Shown here in pieces: positions 7,795 through 46,190 of a DNA stretch of 64,000 nucleotides. A program made the position numbers and the translations under genes. Location: the IMG/VR virus record IMGVR_UViG_3300043410_001892, positions 308,174 to 372,173 of that record; one strand, written 5' to 3'. Numbering within the stretch: the first letter of the stretch is position 1; each line of letters starts with the position of its first letter. Under the pieces are notes generated by a model. That model was not told where the DNA came from and made no database searches. It saw only the letters and a program-made list of their open reading frames with translations.

Positions 7795-9009
7795 TCACTG
7801 ATTATAAAGTAAAGTTAGACTAAAATTAGTACCTGCTCCTGCCACTACGCTAACCGTAAGTCGATCATTTGTATTGATACCAATTTGTAAACCAGTGTAC
7901 ATTGCTGTAATATTTGGTGCGTCAATTTGAAAAAATTGAACTAAGTCACCGCTTTTATATAATCCAACCATTATTTGTGAGGTTGTCATATTACCAACTG
8001 TTAGCTGTACAGATGTTATTAGTGAAGTAGCAACTGGAACAAAAATTGCACTTCCTAAAAGTGGTGCATGGAATTCTCCTAATATATTAAATGTTTTAAT
8101 TATAACAGGTGGGACATTATTTAAATCTTCGTAACTACCAGTTTTTGCTACAGTTGATAATCCTAAATTTGTAAATGCATTTAATTTTTCAGTATCTGAC
8201 AGATTTTGATTATTAACATCATATCTTATTGATGCAGTTACAAATTCAGTATATTCTAATCCATCTGCAGTAGAATTAACTCTTAAAACATTACCAGCTG
8301 CCCCGATTGGTAATGTAGTCATCTCATTATTAAGAGAACCAATTAGTATATCATTGGGATTAATAGATGAAAGACCAGTACCACCGTATTGTGGAGTTAT
8401 AACAGTACCATTCCACTCACCGGTAGTAATTGTTCCTAATGTAGTGATACTTGTTTGACCAACGTATGTGCTATCGATATCAATATTGGTAGTTGATACT
8501 ACAATTCGTCCATCAGTTCCTGCTTGTATTATCCCAGGAGGTCCTTGTTCACCTGTTGCACCGGTTGCACCAGTTGGTCCTTGTACACCAGGTACACCTT
8601 GTGGACCAGTATCACCTGTATCACCTTTAGGTCCTTGTAATCCGGTTTCTCCTTGTGGTCCAGTTAAACCAATAGGACCTTGATCACCAGTATCTCCCTT
8701 AGGTCCCTGTAAACCAGTTTCTCCTTGTGGTCCAGCAGGTCCAGTTTCACCTGTATCACCCTTAGGTCCTTGTAATCCAGTTTCACCTTGTGGTCCAGCA
8801 GGTCCAGTTTCACCTTGTGGACCAGTTGCACCCGGAATACCTTGTCCACCTGTTGAATATGGTAAATCATTCCATCGATGAATTCCATCACCAATCTTAA
8901 ATTTACCACCTTGATCTAATTCAATTGCTAATTCACCTTCAGCAAGAAGTGGATTATAATAAGTCCAGTCTGCCGCGAGTCCTCGCCGTAGTTGTAGCTG
9001 ATTAGCCAT
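7795..9009 (-). CDS. Collagen-like fibre protein with Mtd-like N-terminal domain
   Basis: N-term LRRG..ADW....LAEGE.AIELD..KFKIGDG..WNDLPY, then about 35 Gly-X-Y triplets. Confidence 0.8.
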
Positions 9010-11056
9010 TTATTCCTCCAAAATCAAAGGTTACTAATCCGCCGTATACTGAATTAGGTCCACCTCCGTCTATCATAAATTGTGATAAATCACCTTTAGG
9101 TCCTTGTGGTCCAATCGGACCAATATCACCTGTGTCGCCTTTAGGTCCTTGCGGTCCTACAGCTCCGTCTATTCCTTGTCTTCCGTCAACACCGGCAGGT
9201 CCTTGTTCTCCCTGAGGTCCTTGTGGACCAATTGGTCCAGTTTCACCTTGAATTCCTTGAATTCCTTGTGGACCAGTTTCGCCTTGAATTCCTTGAATTC
9301 CTTGTGGACCTTGATCTCCGGTATCGCCTTTAGGTCCCTGTATGCCTTGAATCCCTTGTGGACCAGTTAAACCAATTTCTCCTTTAAGACCTTGTTCGCC
9401 TTGTGGTCCTTGTGGCCCAATCGGTCCAGTTAAACCAGTTAAACCACGTGGTCCTTGTTCTCCCTGAAGGCCTTGAGGTCCTTGGTCGCCTTGTGGACCA
9501 ATTAATCCTGCAGGTCCTTGTGGTCCTTGTGGCCCAGTTAAACCATCTGCTCCCTGTGGTCCTTGTGGTCCAACAGCACCAGTTAAACCAGTAGCGCCAG
9601 TTAGTCCGCGTTCTCCCTGAAGTCCCTGCGGACCTTGCGGTCCTTGTGGACCAGTTAAACCAGTAGCACCTGTTGCACCAGTTAACCCCTGTGGTCCTTG
9701 AGCACCTTGTTCGCCTTGAGGACCAGTAGCACCAGTTAAACCACGTAGACCTTGCGGTCCTGTTGGTCCAATTTCTCCTTGTGGTCCTTGTATACCTTGA
9801 GCACCAGTTAATCCAGTTAAACCACGTTCCCCTTGTATACCTTGATCGCCTTGTGGTCCTTGTGGTCCAACAGCACCAGTAGCACCGGTAGCACCAGTTA
9901 GGCCACGCTCTCCTTGTATACCTTGCGGTCCTTGTGGTCCAACAGGACCAGTTGCGCCAGTTGCTCCTGTAGCGCCAGTTGCACCTGGTAATCCGTCTGC
10001 ACCTGCAGGGCCTTGTGGTCCAACTGCGCCAGTAGCACCAGTTAAACCAGTTAGTCCGCGTTCGCCTTGTAATCCCTGCGGTCCTTGTTCGCCTTGTGGT
10101 CCGGCAGCACCAGTTAAACCAGTTAGTCCGCGTTCTCCCTGCGGTCCTTGTGGTCCAATTGGTCCTTGTTCACCAGTAGCACCAGTTAAGCCGCGCGGTC
10201 CAGTCGGTCCTGCCGGTCCGGTATCGCCTTGTATACCTTGTGGACCAGTTGCGCCAGTAGCACCAGTTAAACCAGTAGCGCCAGTTAACCCCTGTGGTCC
10301 TTGTAATCCCTGTGGTCCTTGTGGGCCAACAGCACCAGTTGCACCAGTAGCGCCAGTAGCGCCTGGTAATCCGTCTGCACCTGCAGGTCCTTGTGGTCCA
10401 GTTGGTCCAGTTAAGCCAGTTAACCCACGTGGTCCTTGATCACCGGTATCACCTTTAGGTCCAGTTGGTCCAGTTAAACCAGTAGCACCAGTAGCACCAG
10501 TTAGTCCTCGTTCCCCTTGTATACCTTGAGGTCCGTCAGGTCCAGTTGGTCCGGTTAAACCAGTTAAACCACGTGGTCCTTGATCGCCTTGAGGTCCTTG
10601 TGGACCAGTTAAGCCTTGAGGTCCTTGTGGTCCAGCTGGGCCAGCTGGCCCTTGTGGTCCTGTAGTATATTCGACGCTAATAGTTCCGTCTGCGCTAACA
10701 GTAATACCAGAACCAATTTTAACACCGCCGAGGATAGATGAAGTAGCAATAGGTGTAGCAGATGCAGATCGCCATGTATTTGCATATCGGATATTTAGAT
10801 TGCCAGTTGTGGTATTCCACCACAAAGTACCTGGATCTAAAGAAGATGGAGGAGTGCTTGAAACGTAGATTGTTGCGTTGCCGGAACCCCCTCCACCTCC
10901 AGATCCTCCAAAGGTGAGTGGAATACCGCCAAGCGTTATACCGTCAGATAATCGTAAATCGCCGACATCTTCGTTATAAAATATAATACCTTTTTCGCCG
11001 ACAAAGTCGTCGGCATCAATTTTAACACGTCCTGATCTAATCTTTTGAGTGGTCAT
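9002..11056 (-). CDS. Collagen triple-helix repeat fibre protein
   Basis: About 175 consecutive Gly-X-Y triplets ([12 protein letters not shown]). Confidence 0.9.
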
Positions 11057-11106: not shown

Positions 11107-11340
11107 CTAGCGACGTCGTTTAGCTAGAATCGCTTCTTTTTCTAATTTTTTACGGTAACGTGCTTTTGCAGCGCCTGCTTCACGTTTACGCTTTGTAGTG
11201 GGTTTTTCGTAGAATTCTTTCTTACGTAGAGTTTCTAATTTATTTGAATCTTCAACTTTGCGTTTAAATCTACGCAATGCTTGTGTAATATTTTCATTTT
11301 CTCTTACTGAAACTTTAACTTTATTCTGCAGTGTTATCAT
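11107..11340 (-). CDS. rpsU: 30S ribosomal protein bS21
   Basis: [16 protein letters not shown].....[21 protein letters not shown] matches the bS21 signature; start reassigned to ATG 11340. Confidence 0.92.
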
Positions 11341-11728
11341 TATCTTCCTCATTGTTAATTTGATCAACTATCCAATCTAAATCAAAAATTCTATTTTTAG
11401 AAATTAAATTGTATGGTGTTAGTTCGTCGTTAGTTATATAATATGATTCTGGGTGTGTTAGCATAAAACTAATAAACAGTTTAGTAGTTGGATCACAATT
11501 ATCAACATCAATAATTATTACAGCTACTTGATGCATTACACTCAATAACCATTCAATATCTGGTTCGTCAGTATCGTAAATGAAGACATTCATGTCTTCA
11601 TCAGATTGACTAATAATAGTTTGAAAATTTTCTAAAACATTATTTGATGGACGTACTAATAAATAACCAACATCTAAATTAAAAAATTTATCTGGAGGAG
11701 TTATAACTGTAACTTTTCCTAAATTCAT
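11321..11728 (-). CDS. Hypothetical phage protein
   Basis: 135-aa ORF overlapping the rpsU start. Confidence 0.7.
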
Positions 11729-11736
11729 GTGACCTT

Positions 11737-12264
11737 CTATGTAGTGATTAGTTTTGTTTTGTATTTAGTGTAAAAACCTTTCACTGTTAAAGAAACCTTT
11801 TGAACACCGGTAATTCCAATTCTTTTAGCAGCTTCTTTTGAAAGATCAATGATTCTGCCTTTTAAAAATGGTCCGCGGTCATTGATTCTAACTAGTACTG
11901 ATTTATGATTTACATCATTAGTTACTTCAACAACTGTGCCAAATGGTAATGTCTTATGTGCTGCAGTTAGTTCTTTTGGACTAAAATATTCTCCGTTTGC
12001 AGTTTTTGGTCTGCGACGATATCTTGGTCCTGATTCATAACCATACCAGCTTGCATAACCATTCATGCTATCTCCAGATGCTAACGGATTTCTGTGTTTA
12101 TGTTTTCTGTGTTTTTTGAATAATGCAATTTTATGTTTCATTTTTGCATTGTGTTTAACTTGTTCGACATGTTTTTCGTTGACATGTTTTTGTGACGCAT
12201 CTACTGGAAATGCGGTTGAAATTAATGAGAGGGCAAGAAGCCCTATTGGTAGTGAATTTTTCAT
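11737..12264 (-). CDS. rlpA: RlpA-family septal ring lytic transglycosylase (DPBB) with N-terminal signal peptide
   Basis: G.ASWYG...TANGE.F....[16 protein letters not shown]...[19 protein letters not shown]; start [12 protein letters not shown] with AAAGGAG RBS. Confidence 0.9.
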
Positions 12265-12269
12265 ATTTT

Positions 12270-12575
12270 CTCCTTTCACTTGGTGTGCTCTGTCACAGCC
12301 GCACATTACATTAAGGGAGTAAACTGCACGAGGTTCTTCGAACCCATTTGTTCGTGACGTCTTCTCCATCAGCCACAACATTAAAACTGCAAATGTTGTA
12401 CCTTTGGCAAGCCTGGCTTCCCGAATTTCGCGGGTTTCTACTTTGGCCAAGACTCGCAGGATTGATTACATCTCTCAATCCAACTATCTTAGTTTCTCTC
12501 GAAACATATAATATATAGTATAAATTGATAAAATACAATTTAAAATATGGTTTTTTATCTAATTAACTTATACTT
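12270..12575 (-). ncRNA. Candidate structured 5' leader RNA of rlpA
   Basis: GC-elevated leader with several stems: GGATTGA/TCAATCC, GCGAGTCTTGGC/GCCAGGCTTGC enclosing CCCG/CGGG, ACAACATT/AATGTTGT, CACGA/TCGTG enclosing GGTTC/GAACC. Confidence 0.5.
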
Positions 12576-12581
12576 TTACAT

Positions 12582-12610
12582 ATTATACATAAAAATTGCT
12601 AAGTTGTCAA
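12582..12610 (-). promoter_or_regulatory. Consensus sigma70 promoter for leader + rlpA
   Basis: TTGACA-17bp-TATAAT on the minus strand. Confidence 0.8.
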
Positions 12611-12647
12611 GTGAAAACTACTAAATATAAGATAATAGGAGTTTTTA

Positions 12648-13550
12648 ATGAAAATACATGAATTAATGGAAGCACGTTTGCAAGATTCACTCCCTCATCT
12701 TCTTACAAGCGTAGCATCTTTAGAAAAACTATATACAATTACCATGCCAGGCATTCTTGCTGATTTTACAAGAAAAATGCGTGATACTGGTGCTGCTACT
12801 GATAGTTTTGGTCGTGGTATGGAAAATAGAGATATTAGAACTGTTACGATGCAACTTGGTGCTGCAAAATCAAAATGGTTTACTGAAAATTATTTTTCAT
12901 ATTCTAAGAGTAGAAGAGAGTTATCAGGGACTGGGCTAAAAACTGCATTAGTGGAATTATCAAAATTACCTGAATTACAAAGCATTCCTGCTATAAAAAC
13001 ATTAGCACATTTAGATGTTAACATAAATCCAAATAATAAATCTAAAGAAGCTGACATTATGTCATATGGTGAGTTAATGGGTGAGATTGAATTAGAGTTA
13101 CCAGAAATTTTAGAAAAAATTGGTAAAATTATTGGAAATCCGGATTTAACTGCTAGAGGAACAAGGTTAGATACTACTATCGGATCTTGGTATAAAAAGA
13201 AAGATGCTACTGTTCCAAAAGTTCATCAGGATGCAGACAAAATAGTAAAACGTGGTGATGCATATCATACTCATCGTAAAGATAGTAATTTAGGTAAAGG
13301 TGACATCATGTCGCCAGCTGAAAAACCTGGCAAATCTGGCAATCATAGTCAAAATATGAGTGCTGCTCAACAAGCAATTAATCAAGGTTTTGAATTACTT
13401 AAAAAGCATGGTATTAGAGATCATGAATTACATGCAATTAGACAAAAAGTTCAAAAAAGTGATAATCAACTAATGGCCTTACTGCAAGTATTTCAAGAGT
13501 TTGGAATCAACCCAAATGCGTTAATGGAAGCTTGGTTAAGAACTTATTAA
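12648..13550 (+). CDS. Hypothetical protein with capsid-targeting-like N-terminus
   Basis: 300 aa, MKIHELMEA start, AGGAG RBS, CTAAATA late-type promoter. Confidence 0.75.
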   Translation: MKIHELMEARLQDSLPHLLTSVASLEKLYTITMPGILADFTRKMRDTGAATDSFGRGMENRDIRTVTMQLGAAKSKWFTENYFSYSKSRRELSGTGLKTALVELSKLPELQSIPAIKTLAHLDVNINPNNKSKEADIMSYGELMGEIELELPEILEKIGKIIGNPDLTARGTRLDTTIGSWYKKKDATVPKVHQDADKIVKRGDAYHTHRKDSNLGKGDIMSPAEKPGKSGNHSQNMSAAQQAINQGFELLKKHGIRDHELHAIRQKVQKSDNQLMALLQVFQEFGINPNALMEAWLRTY

Positions 13551-13664: not shown

Positions 13665-13931
13665 TTATCCGCCTGCAAATACGTTACCTGAACCGGTTGC
13701 AGGATGTGCGCATGATGCTTTATCACCCTCGCGACATACTCCAATATTGTTAGCAAACACTGTTCCGCTATGGTCAACCATTACAGGTGACGCATGTGGT
13801 GCATCACCGTGACCTTGAATGTGAGCACCTTGTACTGTAATAGGTTTGTTATTAACAAATACAGTAGGTGCTAACGCTTCAATGATTGTGCCACCTGCGG
13901 TATCTTGATTTACTCTCGAAACCCCAGGCAT
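13665..13931 (-). CDS. PAAR-domain baseplate spike tip protein (gp5.4-like)
   Basis: TVFVNNKP...H..HG..PH...S.TVFAN..GVCREGD.ASCAH..TGSGNVF. Confidence 0.85.
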   Translation of the reverse strand: MPGVSRVNQDTAGGTIIEALAPTVFVNNKPITVQGAHIQGHGDAPHASPVMVDHSGTVFANNIGVCREGDKASCAHPATGSGNVFAGG

Positions 13932-14218
13932 TAGGTTATAATACCAGTTGTTGCTTTAGTATAAGAACTTGCTGATTCTTTTTCAGTTGGTTCCATTACT
14001 ACTACAGTAGATGCAGCAATTTTAACTACTTTATCAGGATCAACTGTAAACAAGTATGGTGCCATTCCAATACCTGATTGTGTATTAGCTAACACACGAG
14101 GTTTTGAAACTTTAATATATTTGTCTGTTTCTTCAACCAATGAGGCTAATAGTTCTTCACCAGAAGTTAATTTAATTGTAACTACATCACCTACTGAAAC
14201 GCCTTTATCTATAATCAT
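13931..14218 (-). CDS. Conserved hypothetical phage protein (possible Sm-like fold)
   Basis: GDVVTIKLTSGEEL.A pattern. Confidence 0.6.
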   Translation of the reverse strand: MIIDKGVSVGDVVTIKLTSGEELLASLVEETDKYIKVSKPRVLANTQSGIGMAPYLFTVDPDKVVKIAASTVVVMEPTEKESASSYTKATTGIIT

Positions 14219-14448
14219 ACTTTACCTTTTAAATAATTTTGTAATTCTGAAAAACCACCTACATATTGACCATCAATTTTAATTTGTGGTACTGAACGTG
14301 CAGCTGGTACTTCTTCTAATAAATGTTCTTTTGTCCATCCGCCATCTGACAGATTTCTTTCTTCAAACTTAATGTTTTTCATTAGTAACAAGTTCTTAGC
14401 TTGTGTACATTGCGGGCACTGGTCCTTGCTCCATATAATTGCTGTCAT
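14215..14448 (-). CDS. Glutaredoxin
   Basis: CPQC, RSVPQI..DG.YVGGF; clustered with nrdAB. Confidence 0.9.
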   Translation of the reverse strand: MTAIIWSKDQCPQCTQAKNLLLMKNIKFEERNLSDGGWTKEHLLEEVPAARSVPQIKIDGQYVGGFSELQNYLKGKV

Positions 14449-14993
14449 TAAAAACTATCCATAATCTTTTGTAATCTATGCCATTCATCCATTTCTTTTT
14501 CTTTGTTAGCATTGCGGTAGTTTATGTATTCATCTGCGTACGGCGAAGCCGGCATTGGTTCTAAATTAGGTTTTGGATTTCCTGTAATACTGCAAACTGG
14601 TGCGTTTATCTTAGTTAACATATAATTACGAATTTTATCTGCAATAGTTTTTGATCGCGGTTTTTCAAAAAACTCAGCAACTGCACATAAAAACTTTACA
14701 GTACGGCATTCGTATTTTTGTTCAACTGCTTTTACGTGTTCGCTGATAATTTTCATATCATGTACTATTGCTCGATAATCCTCATCTGTTGATGTACGCA
14801 GTCTAACCAGTCGATCTTGACCTTCTTTTAATGTTATTTTTAACACTCTTATTCTTTCAGCCGGATTAATATACGAGTTATACCGGCTATTTGGATCAGC
14901 TTTGTCTGATTGACTTGGATTTTCAAGATCAGATATCTCTTGTTTTACTTTTTCAATTCTATCTTCTAATTTTTTTATTAAATGTGTTGTCAT
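14448..14993 (-). CDS. Hypothetical protein
   Basis: 181-aa ORF coupled to grx. Confidence 0.65.
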   Translation of the reverse strand: MTTHLIKKLEDRIEKVKQEISDLENPSQSDKADPNSRYNSYINPAERIRVLKITLKEGQDRLVRLRTSTDEDYRAIVHDMKIISEHVKAVEQKYECRTVKFLCAVAEFFEKPRSKTIADKIRNYMLTKINAPVCSITGNPKPNLEPMPASPYADEYINYRNANKEKEMDEWHRLQKIMDSF

Positions 14994-15128
14994 TTTAAAA
15001 AGTCCTTATGTGGGTTAGACCAATCGATCAATGATATCTTTTTCATCATATCATCTATTGCTTGTTGTTGGCTATTGATCGCTGCTTTAGTTAGTTCAGT
15101 GTACCTAGATGCTCTAGCGCACCTATAC

Positions 15129-15323
15129 TTACGGCTTTTCTTCAAAAATCTGTCTGAGCGCATTCTTCATGGCCTCCTGTTCTTTTTCAGTCCATAAACC
15201 AGCTGATGGAGTTTTTCCTTCTTTAACCATTGCGCAAGGGCATACAGGATCATTGCCCTGCGGTCCCATGCATGCACAAATCTTAAGATCTTTGTATTCG
15301 TTATAAGGCTGGTAGTTCGTCAT
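15129..15323 (-). CDS. Small Cys-rich hypothetical protein
   Basis: CACMGP...P.CPC.M motif; overlaps the nrdB end. Confidence 0.55.
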   Translation of the reverse strand: MTNYQPYNEYKDLKICACMGPQGNDPVCPCAMVKEGKTPSAGLWTEKEQEAMKNALRQIFEEKP

Positions 15324-16395
15324 AATTTAATTCATCCGACATTACACCTACTACATAGTTGACACTTTCAGATTCTTGTAAAGCAGTTTGCTTTTTACTC
15401 GGATCACTATGCTTGTTAAACCATGGAATAGGAGTTGATTTAGGTGCATGTTCACGATACTTAATGCCAACTTCTTTTAAAGCGTGTGCAGCAGTATAGT
15501 CAACAAATTCTTTTAAGATGTTAGCGTTAAGTCCAATTACTGGTCCTTTTAAGAATAAGTAATCTGCCCATTCTTTTTCTTCGCGAATAACATCTAAGTA
15601 CATATTATACACTAATTCCTCGCATTCTGCTTTAATTTCGGCAAAACGCGGGTCATCTTTTATTACCAAATTAATCATGTAAGCAGTCCACTCTTTATGC
15701 AATAATTCATCTTGTAATATAAGTGCAATAATGTTACCATTACCGATGAACAGTTTATTTTCAACCATTGCTAAACTGGTAGCAAACGACACCATAAATC
15801 TTAATGATTCTAATGCGTAGCTGGCATGTAGCGCAAGCCAGATAGCTTTAATGTGTTCTCTTTCAGGTACATAAATGCTAAGTTCGCATTTGCAATTGAT
15901 TATATGTAATTCATTATAGTATCTACCAACACTACTTGCCATATCAACAATTGGTTTAGTATCATGGATAGTGTTAAATATCTCTTTTGGGACATTATAG
16001 ATATTACGAATAATATGACTATAACTACGACTATGAATATTTGATTCAAAAAAGCCCCAGTTAAGCATTAGTAGTTCTGCTTCAGGTACACTAACTACAG
16101 GTGTAAACACTTGTGTAGGACCTCGTCCTTGTAAACTGTCTAATGCAGTTTGTCTTAATAAGTTACTAGTGAAAATATGTTTAACTGCATCACTAGCATC
16201 TTTAAAATCATTAGCGTCTTTGCTTAATGAGATTTCTTCTGGAGTCCAAAAGAAACCTCTAGCAGTTTGCTCATATTTTTGAATTTTTGGATAGCGAACT
16301 TCTTCAAATCTTTGAATGGTAACTGTCCCGTCTAGAAACAATTTTCTAGACAGGTAGTTAGTTTGTTCGCTTAGATTATATTGTTCATCACTCAT
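15301..16395 (-). CDS. nrdB: Ribonucleotide reductase class Ia beta subunit
   Basis: FFWTPEEI, LDSLQGR, E..HSRSY, LE..RF.VSFA, DE.LH, QE.E...Y. Confidence 0.95.
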   Translation of the reverse strand: MSDEQYNLSEQTNYLSRKLFLDGTVTIQRFEEVRYPKIQKYEQTARGFFWTPEEISLSKDANDFKDASDAVKHIFTSNLLRQTALDSLQGRGPTQVFTPVVSVPEAELLMLNWGFFESNIHSRSYSHIIRNIYNVPKEIFNTIHDTKPIVDMASSVGRYYNELHIINCKCELSIYVPEREHIKAIWLALHASYALESLRFMVSFATSLAMVENKLFIGNGNIIALILQDELLHKEWTAYMINLVIKDDPRFAEIKAECEELVYNMYLDVIREEKEWADYLFLKGPVIGLNANILKEFVDYTAAHALKEVGIKYREHAPKSTPIPWFNKHSDPSKKQTALQESESVNYVVGVMSDELNYDELPAL

Positions 16396-45048: not shown

Positions 45049-45410
45049 CAGAAGGTGTCGCGCAAACCACATAGTAACTGCGCCCTATAACTGGACAACT
45101 GTATCACAGTGAAGGAATTGTTGAGCTGTAGCAACGACATAACCACCTACCCATTTGGATGAACATGAGATGTACCTTTACAAAACTCATTACAGGTTAT
45201 GGCCCCGCTGTACACATAAGGTTAAAAGAAGGAGTAGCACTCCTACGATTGTATATGCAGTTAGCATTGTGTATACAGTCCGCCGTCATATTTACCAGGA
45301 CGGAGCTCGAGGTACCGGATGACCGCCTCTGTAATGCTCTAATGCTAAGACATGAAAAACTCAACAAATGTTCGCCATTGGCCTTTACGGGCCAATGTGA
45401 CTTCTTAATC
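45043..45410 (+). ncRNA. Candidate large structured non-coding RNA
   Basis: Follows a strong promoter with no credible ORF; at least 8 stems and a potential 8-bp pseudoknot (see findings). Confidence 0.6.
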
Positions 45411-45767: not shown

Positions 45768-45833
45768 ATTATCATTTGTAAATTCTAAAAATTTATATTA
45801 CAATAATGTTTTTTAATAATCATGAGGTGCAAC

Positions 45834-46190
45834 ATGGCAAAAAAAGTTAAGTATAAATCAGCCGAAGATAAACGCCGTGCATTAGAAGCTGAAAAACAAT
45901 GGAAAGAAATGACTAAGACATATGGTCTTAGTGATAAGCCGGCTAATACAAAATCACTTAGAACAATCTCACAGAAAAAAACATTAAGTAATGTTGCACC
46001 AACATATAGAGGTAGTGATAGTAAACCTCCCAGTTTAGTTACAACTACTAAAGGTGGCGGCAGCAAAGTTACAGCTCCAAGATATACCGGTACTTTGATT
46101 AAAGGTATCGCAACGATGCATAAATCAAATGCCGTGCCAATTATTGACCAAGAGCAAGCAACTGAGATTTCACGGATGCGTAGAGGATGA
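45834..46190 (+). CDS. Conserved hypothetical phage protein
   Basis: YTGT.IKGIATMHKSNAVP......A.EIS.MRR. Confidence 0.75.
   Translation: MAKKVKYKSAEDKRRALEAEKQWKEMTKTYGLSDKPANTKSLRTISQKKTLSNVAPTYRGSDSKPPSLVTTTKGGGSKVTAPRYTGTLIKGIATMHKSNAVPIIDQEQATEISRMRRG

What the first reader, a model, noticed from the sequence alone, without database searches (positions are those of the whole stretch)
12270..12610. Long structured leader upstream of the phage rlpA cell-wall enzyme
Seen: a perfect sigma70 promoter about 310 nt before the rlpA start. The leader has multiple stems, a twice-repeated GCCAAAG preceding a hairpin, GGAGAAGAC/GTTTACTCC long-range pairing, and a GTGC/GCAC hairpin just before the SD. 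Known: cell-wall hydrolase genes are frequent riboswitch targets (e.g. c-di-AMP), but I cannot match this sequence to that consensus. Inference: an uncharacterised cis-regulatory RNA, possibly also controlling downstream rpsU.
Basis: partly seen in the sequence, partly recalled or inferred. Interest (0 to 1): 0.6.

Follow-up and report, generated by a model that had tools for sequence, protein, structure and literature searches.

The report
Conserved phage leader RNA before lysis enzymes
The stretch upstream of the phage rlpA gene is one copy of a previously undescribed, about 250-nt six-hairpin leader RNA that sits in front of exported cell-wall-cutting enzymes in hundreds of uncultured freshwater phages and probably switches their translation on and off by hiding the ribosome-binding site.

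Summary
On the minus strand there is a perfect TTGACA-17-TATAAT promoter (12610-12582) about 311 nt before the rlpA start (ATG 12264-12262). A G+C-rich (41-48% against 15-30%), well-folding leader follows.

A covariance model scores them at 142-245 bits.

Helices P2, P4, P5 and P6 show many compensatory changes: 94.5-95% of cells paired against 33-45% with slid partners, and 0/500 shuffles reach the observed values. The junctions are nearly invariant.

The gene behind it is always a secreted or membrane-anchored peptidoglycan hydrolase of one of two unrelated folds, RlpA/DPBB or SleB-like Hydrolase_2.

It is not translated, not in Rfam 15, not in GenBank phages and not in bacterial chromosomes searched.

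A conserved CUCC can pair either with an upstream GGAG (closing P5) or with the Shine-Dalgarno GGAG. The two states are nearly isoenergetic. The best reading is a new cis-acting translational riboregulator, a riboswitch candidate with unknown effector. A ribosomal protein S21 gene lies downstream in 94% of loci with enough flank, but control of rpsU is not shown.

The parts
12582..12610 (-). Sigma-70-type promoter: TTGACA (12610-12605), 17-nt spacer, TATAAT (12587-12582)
   Evidence: 12 of 12 consensus matches. Both hexamers are conserved and the spacer is variable in 13 distinct relatives. The transcription start is not mapped.
12506..12575 (-). AT-rich 5' segment between the promoter and the structured element. 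It ends in the family-wide box CTATATATTATATG (12518-12505).
   Evidence: It is diverged among close relatives except for the box. The box directly 5' of P1 is conserved across the family. Whether it is a second (late?) promoter or the RNA's 5' end is not known. It is not a recurring motif in the window.
12492..12505 (-). P1 hairpin GUUUC-GAGA-GAAAC (GNRA-type loop)
   Evidence: 100% of cells are paired, with one compensatory U-A to A-U change. Loops across the family are GNRA or GCAAA.
12483..12491 (-). J1/2 linker UAAGAUAGU, nearly invariant
   Evidence: Alignments A4 and A5.
12459..12481 (-). P2 hairpin, variable in sequence and length
   Evidence: 5 to 6 of 6 pairs show changes on both sides. 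These are among the top mutual-information pairs.
12407..12457 (-). P3 long helix (GCGAGUCUUGGC / GCCAGGCUUGC) enclosing the P3a hairpin CCCG-loop-CGGG (12434-12420)
   Evidence: The 5' strand is invariant and the 3' strand varies only through G-C/G-U and U-G/U-A alternations. The G-U pairs make the structure specific to this strand.
12401..12406 (-). J3/4 CAAAGG (second GCCAAAG copy)
   Evidence: Conserved in A4 and A5.
12375..12399 (-). P4 hairpin (ACAACAUU...AAUGUUGU)
   Evidence: All 4 modelled pairs show changes on both sides. Indels in close relatives are symmetric and lengthen or shorten the stem.
12316..12369 (-). Conserved AUGGAGA, then the P5 long irregular hairpin closed by GGAG (12367-12364) : CUCC (12319-12316)
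   Evidence: The middle helices have 4-5 pairs with compensatory change. The closing GGAG:CUCC is 99-100% paired but invariant.
12304..12315 (-). J5/6 CUUAAUGUAAUG, nearly invariant
   Evidence: Its UAAU can pair with GUGA of the 3' tail (P7b).
12284..12305 (-).
   Evidence: 4 of 6 pairs have changes on both sides and 98.5% of cells are paired. It holds the strongest mutual-information pair in the alignment.
12270..12285 (-). 3' tail CACCAAGUGAAAGGAG, holding the Shine-Dalgarno AAGGAG (12275-12270)
   Evidence: It is nearly invariant also in copies fetched with a 5' pattern only. The alternative hairpin P7 (CUCC:GGAG plus UAAU:GUGA around P6) is compatible in 99.7% of P7a cells.
11737..12264 (-). 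rlpA-like gene: 175 aa, Sec-type signal peptide plus DPBB lytic-transglycosylase domain
   Evidence: Translation. Pfam PF03330 scores 1.6e-23.
11107..11728 (-). Downstream genes on the same strand: orf135 (11728-11321) and rpsU / ribosomal protein S21 (ending at 11107)
   Evidence: Pfam Ribosomal_S21 scores 3.7e-17. Both genes are syntenic with the leader in other loci.

Best explanation
Window 12505-12270 (minus strand) is a member of a new family of about 250-nt structured 5'-leader RNAs carried by uncultured freshwater and aquatic phages.

The RNA folds into six hairpins (P1, P2, P3 with P3a, P4, P5, P6) joined by almost invariant linkers. It ends in the Shine-Dalgarno sequence of an exported peptidoglycan hydrolase gene: RlpA/DPBB here, SleB-like Hydrolase_2 in most relatives.

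It acts in cis on translation initiation. A conserved CUCC either closes P5 by pairing with an upstream GGAG, which leaves the ribosome-binding site free. Or it pairs with the GGAG of the Shine-Dalgarno sequence in an alternative 3' hairpin (P7) that wraps around P6, which blocks the site.

An effector that binds the conserved core tips this balance and so times or doses synthesis of the wall-cutting enzyme. The effector could be a small molecule, a protein or the ribosome, and it is not identified.

Shown: the family, the structure, its strand, its fixed position before these genes, and the lack of translation.
Inferred: the two-state mechanism, the direction of switching, and the existence of an effector.

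The confidence given applies to 'conserved structured cis-acting leader that controls translation of the hydrolase gene'. Confidence in the family and its structure alone is higher, about 0.95.
For: Family and structure:
- Pattern scans found 76 and at least 119 viral stretches and at least 120 metagenome stretches.
- Covariance model R1 gives 82 and 100 full-length matches at 142-245 bits. These make 159 distinct sequences with median identity 62%.
- 94.5% and 95.0% of cells are paired, against 33-45% with slid partners.
- 385 and 389 cells have changes on both sides, against 18-71 with slid partners.
- 0 of 500 shuffles reach the observed paired-cell, double-change-cell or covariation values in either set.
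- In the window the fold z-score is -4.05 and G+C is enriched.

RNA on this strand:
- Many G-U pairs alternate with G-C.
- Relatives' copies are present in contigs of 4 metatranscriptome runs from 3 studies, covering 12220-12520.

Cis-regulatory position:
- The element always ends in AAGGAG, 5-9 nt before the start codon. No terminator-like site lies on the leader's strand in the window, and none on either strand of the one relative scanned.
- The gene behind it is Hydrolase_2 (about 157 copies) or DPBB (about 29), which are two unrelated folds with one function.
- Other phage RlpA loci (L048-L057) and the cell-wall-hydrolase genes of two cultured phages lack the leader.

Not coding: in-frame stops in 49 of 49 copies, and the AUG-initiated upstream frame is inconsistent.

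Switch:
- RNAalifold pairs CUCC with the Shine-Dalgarno GGAG. P7 is compatible in 99.7% of P7a cells.
- In P7b, U:G alternates with U:A (58 and 23) and there is one compensatory A-U.
- The facing positions co-vary as A:G (113) or U:C (33), with 2 exceptions.
- Constrained folds put the two states 1.7 +/- 1.7 kcal/mol apart in 78 members, and the mean probability that the Shine-Dalgarno sequence is unpaired is 0.39.
Against: - GGAG, CUCC and the Shine-Dalgarno sequence are invariant, so covariation cannot tell which partner CUCC uses, or whether it switches at all.
- The co-varying A:G/U:C positions are not Watson-Crick pairs. They could partly reflect shared descent.
- No ligand or binding protein is identified.
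- The hairpins stand in series, and I found no long-range closing helix or pseudoknot. This is less typical of metabolite aptamers.
- The 3' blocks are invariant by construction in the copies fetched with the 3' patterns.
- The carriers share synteny (phrog_27048 upstream, orf135 and S21 downstream), so they are not fully independent lineages.
- The transcription start is unmapped. Metatranscriptome contigs cannot show ends or strand, and may contain DNA.
Confidence: 0.75

Rival explanations
1. It is a true metabolite-binding riboswitch. The conserved junctions form a pocket for a small molecule that reports cell-wall precursor supply, a second messenger or the state of the infected cell. Binding stabilises P5 and turns translation on, or the reverse.
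For: - Covarying stems, invariant junctions and a GNRA-type P1 loop are the classic signature.
- One RNA stands before two non-homologous enzymes of the same function.
- The anti-SD/SD pair is bistable.
- From established knowledge, the ydaO c-di-AMP riboswitch precedes wall-hydrolase genes and glmS senses a wall precursor.
Against: - No copy was found in bacterial chromosomes: 1 phage-like contig in the set of 185,579 species genomes and 0 of 150 other genomes of that order.
- The hairpins are arranged in series without a closing helix.
- No ligand clue comes from the gene context.
- There is no match to any Rfam aptamer.
Confidence: 0.3
2. It is a protein-binding operator. A phage-encoded or host protein binds the invariant linkers and represses or activates translation. 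A special case is autoregulation by the phage's own ribosomal protein S21, which would recognise the 16S-3'-end-like CUCCCUUA segment.
For: - Long invariant single-stranded blocks are present.
- The distribution is phage-only.
- An S21 gene lies on the same strand within 5 kb downstream in 74 of 79 loci with enough flank, and 0.9 kb away in the window's type.
- From established knowledge, S21 sits next to the anti-Shine-Dalgarno end of 16S rRNA, and r-proteins often autoregulate through rRNA mimics.
Against: - S21 is not the regulated cistron and is usually 2-4.8 kb away.
- The synteny may only reflect common descent of these phages.
- The similarity of CUCCCUUA to the 16S 3' end is expected of any anti-SD sequence.
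Confidence: 0.2
3. It gives temporal control by alternative transcripts, as for T4 lysozyme. Long early transcripts from the sigma-70 promoter fold so that the ribosome-binding site is hidden. Later transcripts from an internal or proximal promoter lack part of the structure and are translated. No effector is needed.
For: - There are two promoter-like elements in the window's clade: the perfect sigma-70 site, and the conserved AT-rich box CTATATATTATATG directly 5' of P1.
- One Hydrolase_2-type relative (L061) has an extended -10-like TGcTATAAT close to P1.
- An SD-sequestering hairpin exists.
- From established knowledge, T4 genes e, soc and 49 use this mechanism.
Against: - Both candidate promoters lie upstream of the whole structured element, so both transcripts would contain anti-SD and SD.
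- This model does not explain why P1-P4 and their junctions are so strongly conserved.
- No promoter-like site was found between CUCC and the SD.
Confidence: 0.1
4. It is a constitutive structured 5' UTR with no switching, for example an mRNA-stabilising or ribosome-recruiting leader or an RNA thermometer.
For: - The structure is conserved at the 5' end of the mRNA.
- The predicted SD accessibility is intermediate, about 0.4.
Against: - Stabilisers and thermometers are usually short and poorly conserved in sequence.
- Here about 100 nt of linkers are nearly invariant over copies that are 62% identical overall.
- Two mutually exclusive partners for CUCC are both preserved.
Confidence: 0.1

Closest known systems
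ydaO/yuaA c-di-AMP riboswitch (Rfam RF00379)
   Same: It is a large multi-helix leader found before cell-wall hydrolase genes, and it regulates in cis.
   Different: No sequence or structure match (0 Rfam hits at E<=10). I saw no pseudo-two-fold symmetry. ydaO is bacterial, whereas this RNA was found only in phage contigs.
glmS ribozyme / riboswitch
   Same: It is a structured leader tied to cell-wall metabolism, of comparable size.
   Different: No Rfam match. There is no evidence of self-cleavage. The downstream genes are hydrolases, not a biosynthetic enzyme.
Translational control of T4 lysozyme (gene e) by an SD-sequestering hairpin in early transcripts
   Same: It is a phage lysis enzyme whose ribosome-binding site can be hidden in an RNA hairpin, with more than one promoter upstream.
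   Different: Here the hairpin is only the last part of a 250-nt conserved, covarying six-hairpin RNA. Both candidate promoters lie upstream of all of it.
Phage-borne candidate cis-regulatory RNAs known from metagenomes (manA, wcaG, PhotoRC, glnA in cyanophages; Polynucleobacter-1)
   Same: They are structured RNA motifs known mainly or only from environmental and phage sequence, placed 5' of particular gene classes, with unknown effectors.
   Different: This is an unrelated sequence and fold (no Rfam hit) with a different gene class, the lysis and peptidoglycan hydrolases. Polynucleobacter-1 is present elsewhere in this same window (45055-45199) and is a separate RNA.
Ribosomal-protein autoregulatory leaders (rRNA mimics)
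   Same: It is a conserved structured leader in an operon that contains an r-protein gene (S21), and it has an anti-SD-like segment.
   Different: The r-protein gene is distal, not the first cistron. No S21 leader family is known to me. Binding was not tested.

Membership tests
Any Rfam 15 family (4227 models, including ydaO c-di-AMP, glmS, c-di-GMP-I/II, glycine, NLPC_P60) | A covariance-model match at or near the gathering score | tested here: not met
   There were 0 matches at E<=10 on window 12150-12700. There were 0 at E<=1 on three Hydrolase_2-type loci. The only gathering-level hit in the window is Polynucleobacter-1, at 45055-45199.
Riboswitch (generic definition) | Conserved structured aptamer with covarying stems and conserved junctions | tested here: met
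   Searches give 94.5-95% paired cells, 19-20 pairs with double changes, and 0 of 500 shuffles reaching the paired-cell, double-change-cell or covariation values. One search shows the invariant linkers.
Riboswitch (generic definition) | Expression platform with mutually exclusive structures that affect the SD or a terminator | tested here: inconclusive
   CUCC can pair with the 5' GGAG or with the SD GGAG, and both are about 99% compatible. The two states are near-isoenergetic. All three segments are invariant, so no covariation can decide. No terminator was found.
Riboswitch (generic definition) | Direct, specific binding of a small-molecule ligand | not testable with these tools
   This needs in-line probing, ITC or reporter assays.
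Riboswitch (generic definition) | Association with a coherent set of genes across lineages | tested here: met
   The downstream gene is always Hydrolase_2 or DPBB/RlpA, both exported peptidoglycan hydrolases.
Protein-coding N-terminal extension of RlpA (the 237-aa ORF from TTG 12450) | The frame is open and conserved in homologues, with a codon-like substitution pattern | tested here: not met
   An in-frame stop lies 5-67 codons upstream of the start in 49 of 49 homologues. There are -2, -2 and +1 indels in close relatives, and the element is about 98% identical in nucleotides where RlpA is 67-69% identical in protein.
T4-lysozyme-type transcript-dependent SD masking | A late promoter inside the masking structure, so that late mRNA lacks the anti-SD arm | tested here: not met
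   There is no promoter-like site between CUCC (12319-12316) and the SD. Both candidate promoters are 5' of P1. Phage-specific promoter types are not covered by the scan.
RlpA-like lytic transglycosylase (the regulated gene) | DPBB domain and an export signal | tested here: met
   Pfam PF03330 scores 1.6e-23, above the cut-off of 28.8 bits. The N-terminal hydrophobic signal [23 protein letters not shown] was read. The SPOR domain and lipobox of E. coli RlpA are absent. That absence is read directly from the sequence and was not tested further.

The most novel reading that the evidence does not exclude
This is a riboswitch class that exists only in phages. It senses a small molecule or an infection-state signal, and so sets the moment at which exported lysis enzymes (and perhaps the whole downstream cassette, up to the phage's own ribosomal protein S21) are made. 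That would be an RNA-based lysis timer used by hundreds of freshwater phages.
Probability: 0.3. Interest if true: 0.85.

Novelty: new variant of a known kind. Interest (0 to 1): 0.72.

Why it matters
Phage lysis timing is classically explained by holins and by promoter timing. A large, strongly conserved RNA placed directly on the ribosome-binding site of exported endolysin-type enzymes, in hundreds of environmental phages, would add an RNA layer to that control.

The family is abundant, with at least 159 distinct copies. It has clear covariation and invariant junctions, and it is absent from Rfam and from cultured phages. It is therefore a ready-made candidate for ligand or partner discovery and for structure determination.

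The same leader precedes two unrelated enzyme folds. This shows that the RNA is tied to the function (wall cleavage after export) and not to a particular gene. Its constant company with a phage S21 gene also gives a concrete, testable link between phage-encoded ribosomal proteins and Shine-Dalgarno-dependent control.

Tried and rejected
- Rfam at the gathering threshold on the whole window, and at E<=10 on the region: nothing at the locus. Three relatives at E<=1: nothing.
- tRNA/tmRNA scan: none.
- blastn (sensitive mode) of the region and of a Hydrolase_2-type copy against 50,697 GenBank phage records: no match.
- Bacterial genomes. The 3' pattern gave 0 hits. The 5' pattern gave 40 hits, of which 39 were chance and failed the covariance model. 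The one true hit is a 4.3-kb phage-like contig in a Crocinitomicaceae MAG, syntenic with a viral locus. In 150 further genomes of that order there were 0 matches. A Polynucleobacter genome also gave 0.
- Second copy in the phage's own 372-kb genome: none, and no Hydrolase_2 gene there either.
- The box CTATATATTATATG as a recurring phage promoter in the window: not enriched.
- Coding readings (N-terminal extension; a uORF from the conserved AUGGAG): rejected.
- Long-range helix between CUUGG of P3 and CCAAG of the 3' tail, and between J1/2 AAGAU and GUCUU. All segments are invariant, and 42 copies have CCAAA, which breaks the first helix but improves P7b. Neither is supported.
- Loop-loop contact between P3a and P5, suggested by mutual information: the pattern is not consistently canonical, so I left it open.
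- Cultured-phage relatives of the Hydrolase_2 protein (Melnitz, CRP-1): their genes overlap the upstream gene and have no leader.
- S21 tblastn for a host clue: uninformative.
- The large protein searches were not used.

Full report
**What is in the window**

The window is the last 64 kb of a 372-kb virus record with direct terminal repeats, a jumbo phage from IMG/VR.
- Its start is ATG 12264-12262, preceded by AAGGAG at 12275-12270.
- The 175-aa product has an N-terminal signal sequence and a DPBB lytic-transglycosylase domain (Pfam PF03330, 1.6e-23).
- It is followed head-to-tail by a 135-aa ORF and by a ribosomal protein S21 gene (PF01165, 3.7e-17).
- A divergent 300-aa gene starts at 12648 on the plus strand.

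**Checking the observation**

A perfect TTGACA-17-TATAAT promoter lies at 12610-12582 on the minus strand. It is the only 12-of-12 match in 3 kb. This gives a leader of about 311 nt.

The leader is G+C-rich over 12275-12500, at 41-48%, against 15-30% in the flanks. It folds far better than shuffles, with z = -4.05 and 0 of 100 shuffles as good.

No tRNA or tmRNA is present. No Rfam family matches the locus even at E<=10.

**Relatives**

The RlpA protein found four related viral loci. In three of them RlpA is only 67-69% identical, yet the roughly 235 nt from CTATATATTATATG to the start codon are about 98% identical. The AT-rich segment just downstream of the promoter has diverged. The few differences are a compensatory C-G to U-A change in the last hairpin and symmetric indels in a hairpin loop.

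A profile of RlpA reached more distant phage loci. nhmmer found the element in those at 62-66% protein identity but not in ten others.

Two invariant blocks then served as search patterns.
- TAATGTAATG-N(10-36)-CACCAAGTGAAAGGAG gave 76 viral stretches.
- A degenerate 3' pattern gave at least 120 metagenome stretches, of which 118 carry the element.

**Structure**

I built covariance model R1 (252 positions, 49 pairs) from a 44-sequence alignment and a hand-checked structure.
- It finds 82 full-length copies in the viral loci and 100 in the metagenome loci, at 142-245 bits.
- It finds none in the ten other phage rlpA loci.
- Together the copies make 159 distinct sequences of 227-278 nt, with median pairwise identity 62%.

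Pair counts on the model alignments are as follows.
- 94.5% and 95.0% of cells form standard pairs, against 33-45% when the 3' partners are slid by 1-3 columns.
- 385 and 389 cells have changes on both sides, against 18-71 when slid.
- 0 of 500 shuffles reach the observed paired-cell, double-change-cell or covariation values.

These alignments are fitted to the model. However, the same helices appear independently in single-sequence MFE folds of diverse members and in mutual information.

The architecture, 5' to 3', is:
1. P1, GUUUC-loop-GAAAC, with a GNRA or GCAAA loop.
2. The linker UAAGAUAGU.
3. P2, variable, with 5-6 covarying pairs.
4. P3, with an invariant 5' strand GCGAGUCUUGGCC. Its 3' partner varies through G-C/G-U alternations. 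It encloses P3a (CCCG/CGGG).
5. The linker CAAAGG.
6. P4, covarying.
7. AUGGAGA, opening the long P5, which is closed by GGAG:CUCC and has covarying middle helices.
8. The linker CUUAAUGUAAUG.
9. P6, the best-covarying helix.
10. The tail CACCAAGUGAAAGGAG, then 5-9 nt to the start codon.

The frequent G-U pairs show that the fold belongs to the sense RNA strand.

**Gene association**

In every copy where the downstream ORF can be read, it is one of two kinds.
- A SleB-like Hydrolase_2 protein with an N-terminal membrane helix (PF07486, about 1e-25; PHROG 'endolysin').
- A signal-peptide DPBB/RlpA protein.

Among the viral copies there are 56 Hydrolase_2 and 19 DPBB. Among the metagenome copies there are 101 and 10. 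The apparent exceptions are truncated contigs or a start codon 5 nt further on.

In the Hydrolase_2 loci a small protein with three hydrophobic segments (holin-like by eye, no family match) follows. A phrog_27048 gene precedes the leader. The window's phage has one copy of the leader and no Hydrolase_2 gene. Here RlpA appears to take that place.

**Not coding**

The 237-aa ORF from TTG 12450 is a chance open frame.
- All 49 homologues in which the start codon could be placed have an in-frame stop 5-67 codons upstream.
- The frame opened by the conserved AUG of AUGGAGA has inconsistent length and sequence.

**Mechanism**

No terminator-like site lies on the leader's strand, and the element ends in the Shine-Dalgarno sequence. 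Control of translation initiation is therefore the natural reading.

RNAalifold pairs CUCC with the Shine-Dalgarno GGAG. That alternative hairpin (P7) has CUCC:GGAG and UAAU:GUGA wrapped around P6, and it is compatible in 99.7% of P7a cells. In P7b:
- U:G alternates with U:A (58 and 23).
- A:U alternates with G:U.
- There is one compensatory A-U.
- The two facing mismatch positions co-vary as A:G (113 copies) or U:C (33), with two exceptions.

P7a and the P5-closing helix use the same CUCC. Constrained folding of 78 members puts the two states 1.7 +/- 1.7 kcal/mol apart. The mean probability that the Shine-Dalgarno sequence is unpaired is 0.39.

This is what a bistable platform looks like. But the three four-base segments never vary, so the switch is inferred and not shown.

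**Distribution and expression**

Bacterial genomes:
- One genome per each of 185,579 species gave no 3'-pattern hit.
- They gave one true 5'-pattern hit, with 39 chance hits rejected by the model.
- That hit is a 4.3-kb contig in a Crocinitomicaceae MAG, syntenic with a viral locus and carrying a tail-like gene. It is most likely a binned phage contig.
- 150 further genomes of that order have no copy.

Phages and samples:
- GenBank phages have none by blastn. The Hydrolase_2 genes of cultured Melnitz and CRP-1 phages have no leader.
- Runs that hold the window's stretch are freshwater or aquatic.
- Contigs from four metatranscriptome runs of three studies cover 12220-12520 at 85-99% likeness. 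This shows presence in RNA libraries only. It shows no ends and no strand.
- One 253-nt contig coincides with the element's bounds at high depth. This is best explained by many strains collapsing on the conserved stretch.

**Promoters**

The sigma-70 hexamers are conserved within the window's clade. Across the family, an AT-rich box CTATATAwwATA abuts P1. One Hydrolase_2-type relative, L061, has an extended -10-like TGcTATAAT about 27 nt upstream of P1, right after the upstream gene's stop. Which of these starts the RNA is unknown, but all lie 5' of the whole structure. This argues against a T4-lysozyme-type mechanism.

**The rpsU idea**

An S21 gene lies on the same strand within 5 kb downstream in 74 of 79 loci with enough flank. 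It is 0.9 kb away in DPBB-type loci and 2-4.8 kb away in Hydrolase_2-type loci, always preceded by an orf135 homologue.

This is compatible with one long operon, and with an S21-operator hypothesis. It may equally reflect common descent of these phages. Nothing here shows control of rpsU.

**Verdict**

The finding is real and more interesting than stated. It is a new, abundant, phage-borne structured leader family before exported peptidoglycan hydrolases. It most likely acts as a translational riboregulator with a bistable anti-SD/SD platform and an unknown effector.

Literature searches returned nothing that describes it (one search timed out).

Noticed in passing
window 45055-45199 (+): There is a full-length match to the Rfam Polynucleobacter-1 RNA (RF01718) at 61.1 bits against a gathering score of 37. 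It lies in an intergenic gap among small genes with 'HKDWR(L/M)P' motifs. An ORF at 45822-46190 resembles the phrog_27048 protein, which stands directly upstream of the leader in Hydrolase_2-type phages.
   Followed up: partly
window 11107-11367 (-) and loci L003-L349: The phage encodes ribosomal protein S21, preceded by a conserved acidic 135-aa ORF. The pair is syntenic with the leader in 94% of loci with at least 5 kb of downstream flank.
   Followed up: partly
window 9002-11056 (-): A 684-aa protein made almost wholly of collagen-like G-x-y repeats lies directly downstream of rpsU. It is probably a fibre or tail-fibre component.
   Followed up: no
L195 / L229 (Crocinitomicaceae MAG contig, 4299 bp): The only 'bacterial genome' copy of the motif sits on a short contig whose genes (tape-measure-like, epimerase, phrog_27048, endolysin-type Hydrolase_2) mirror viral locus L061. 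It is likely a phage contig binned into the MAG, and so at best a weak host hint.
   Followed up: yes
window 12266-12520, run X16 record 6: A 253-nt metatranscriptome contig matches exactly the element's bounds, at depth 111 against 22-37 for neighbouring contigs. This is probably a collapse of many strains on the conserved stretch. A stable processed leader RNA is not excluded.
   Followed up: no
L061 3291-3593 and homologues (171 loci): A 100-aa protein with three hydrophobic segments overlaps the stop of the Hydrolase_2 gene. It looks like a holin by position and size, though it has no PHROG match. This would make the leader the head of a lysis cassette.
   Followed up: partly
window 13931-16395 (-): A glutaredoxin-like 77-aa ORF and a class I ribonucleotide reductase beta-like 364-aa ORF lie upstream of the region. 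These names were read from the translations and were not checked against a library.
   Followed up: no
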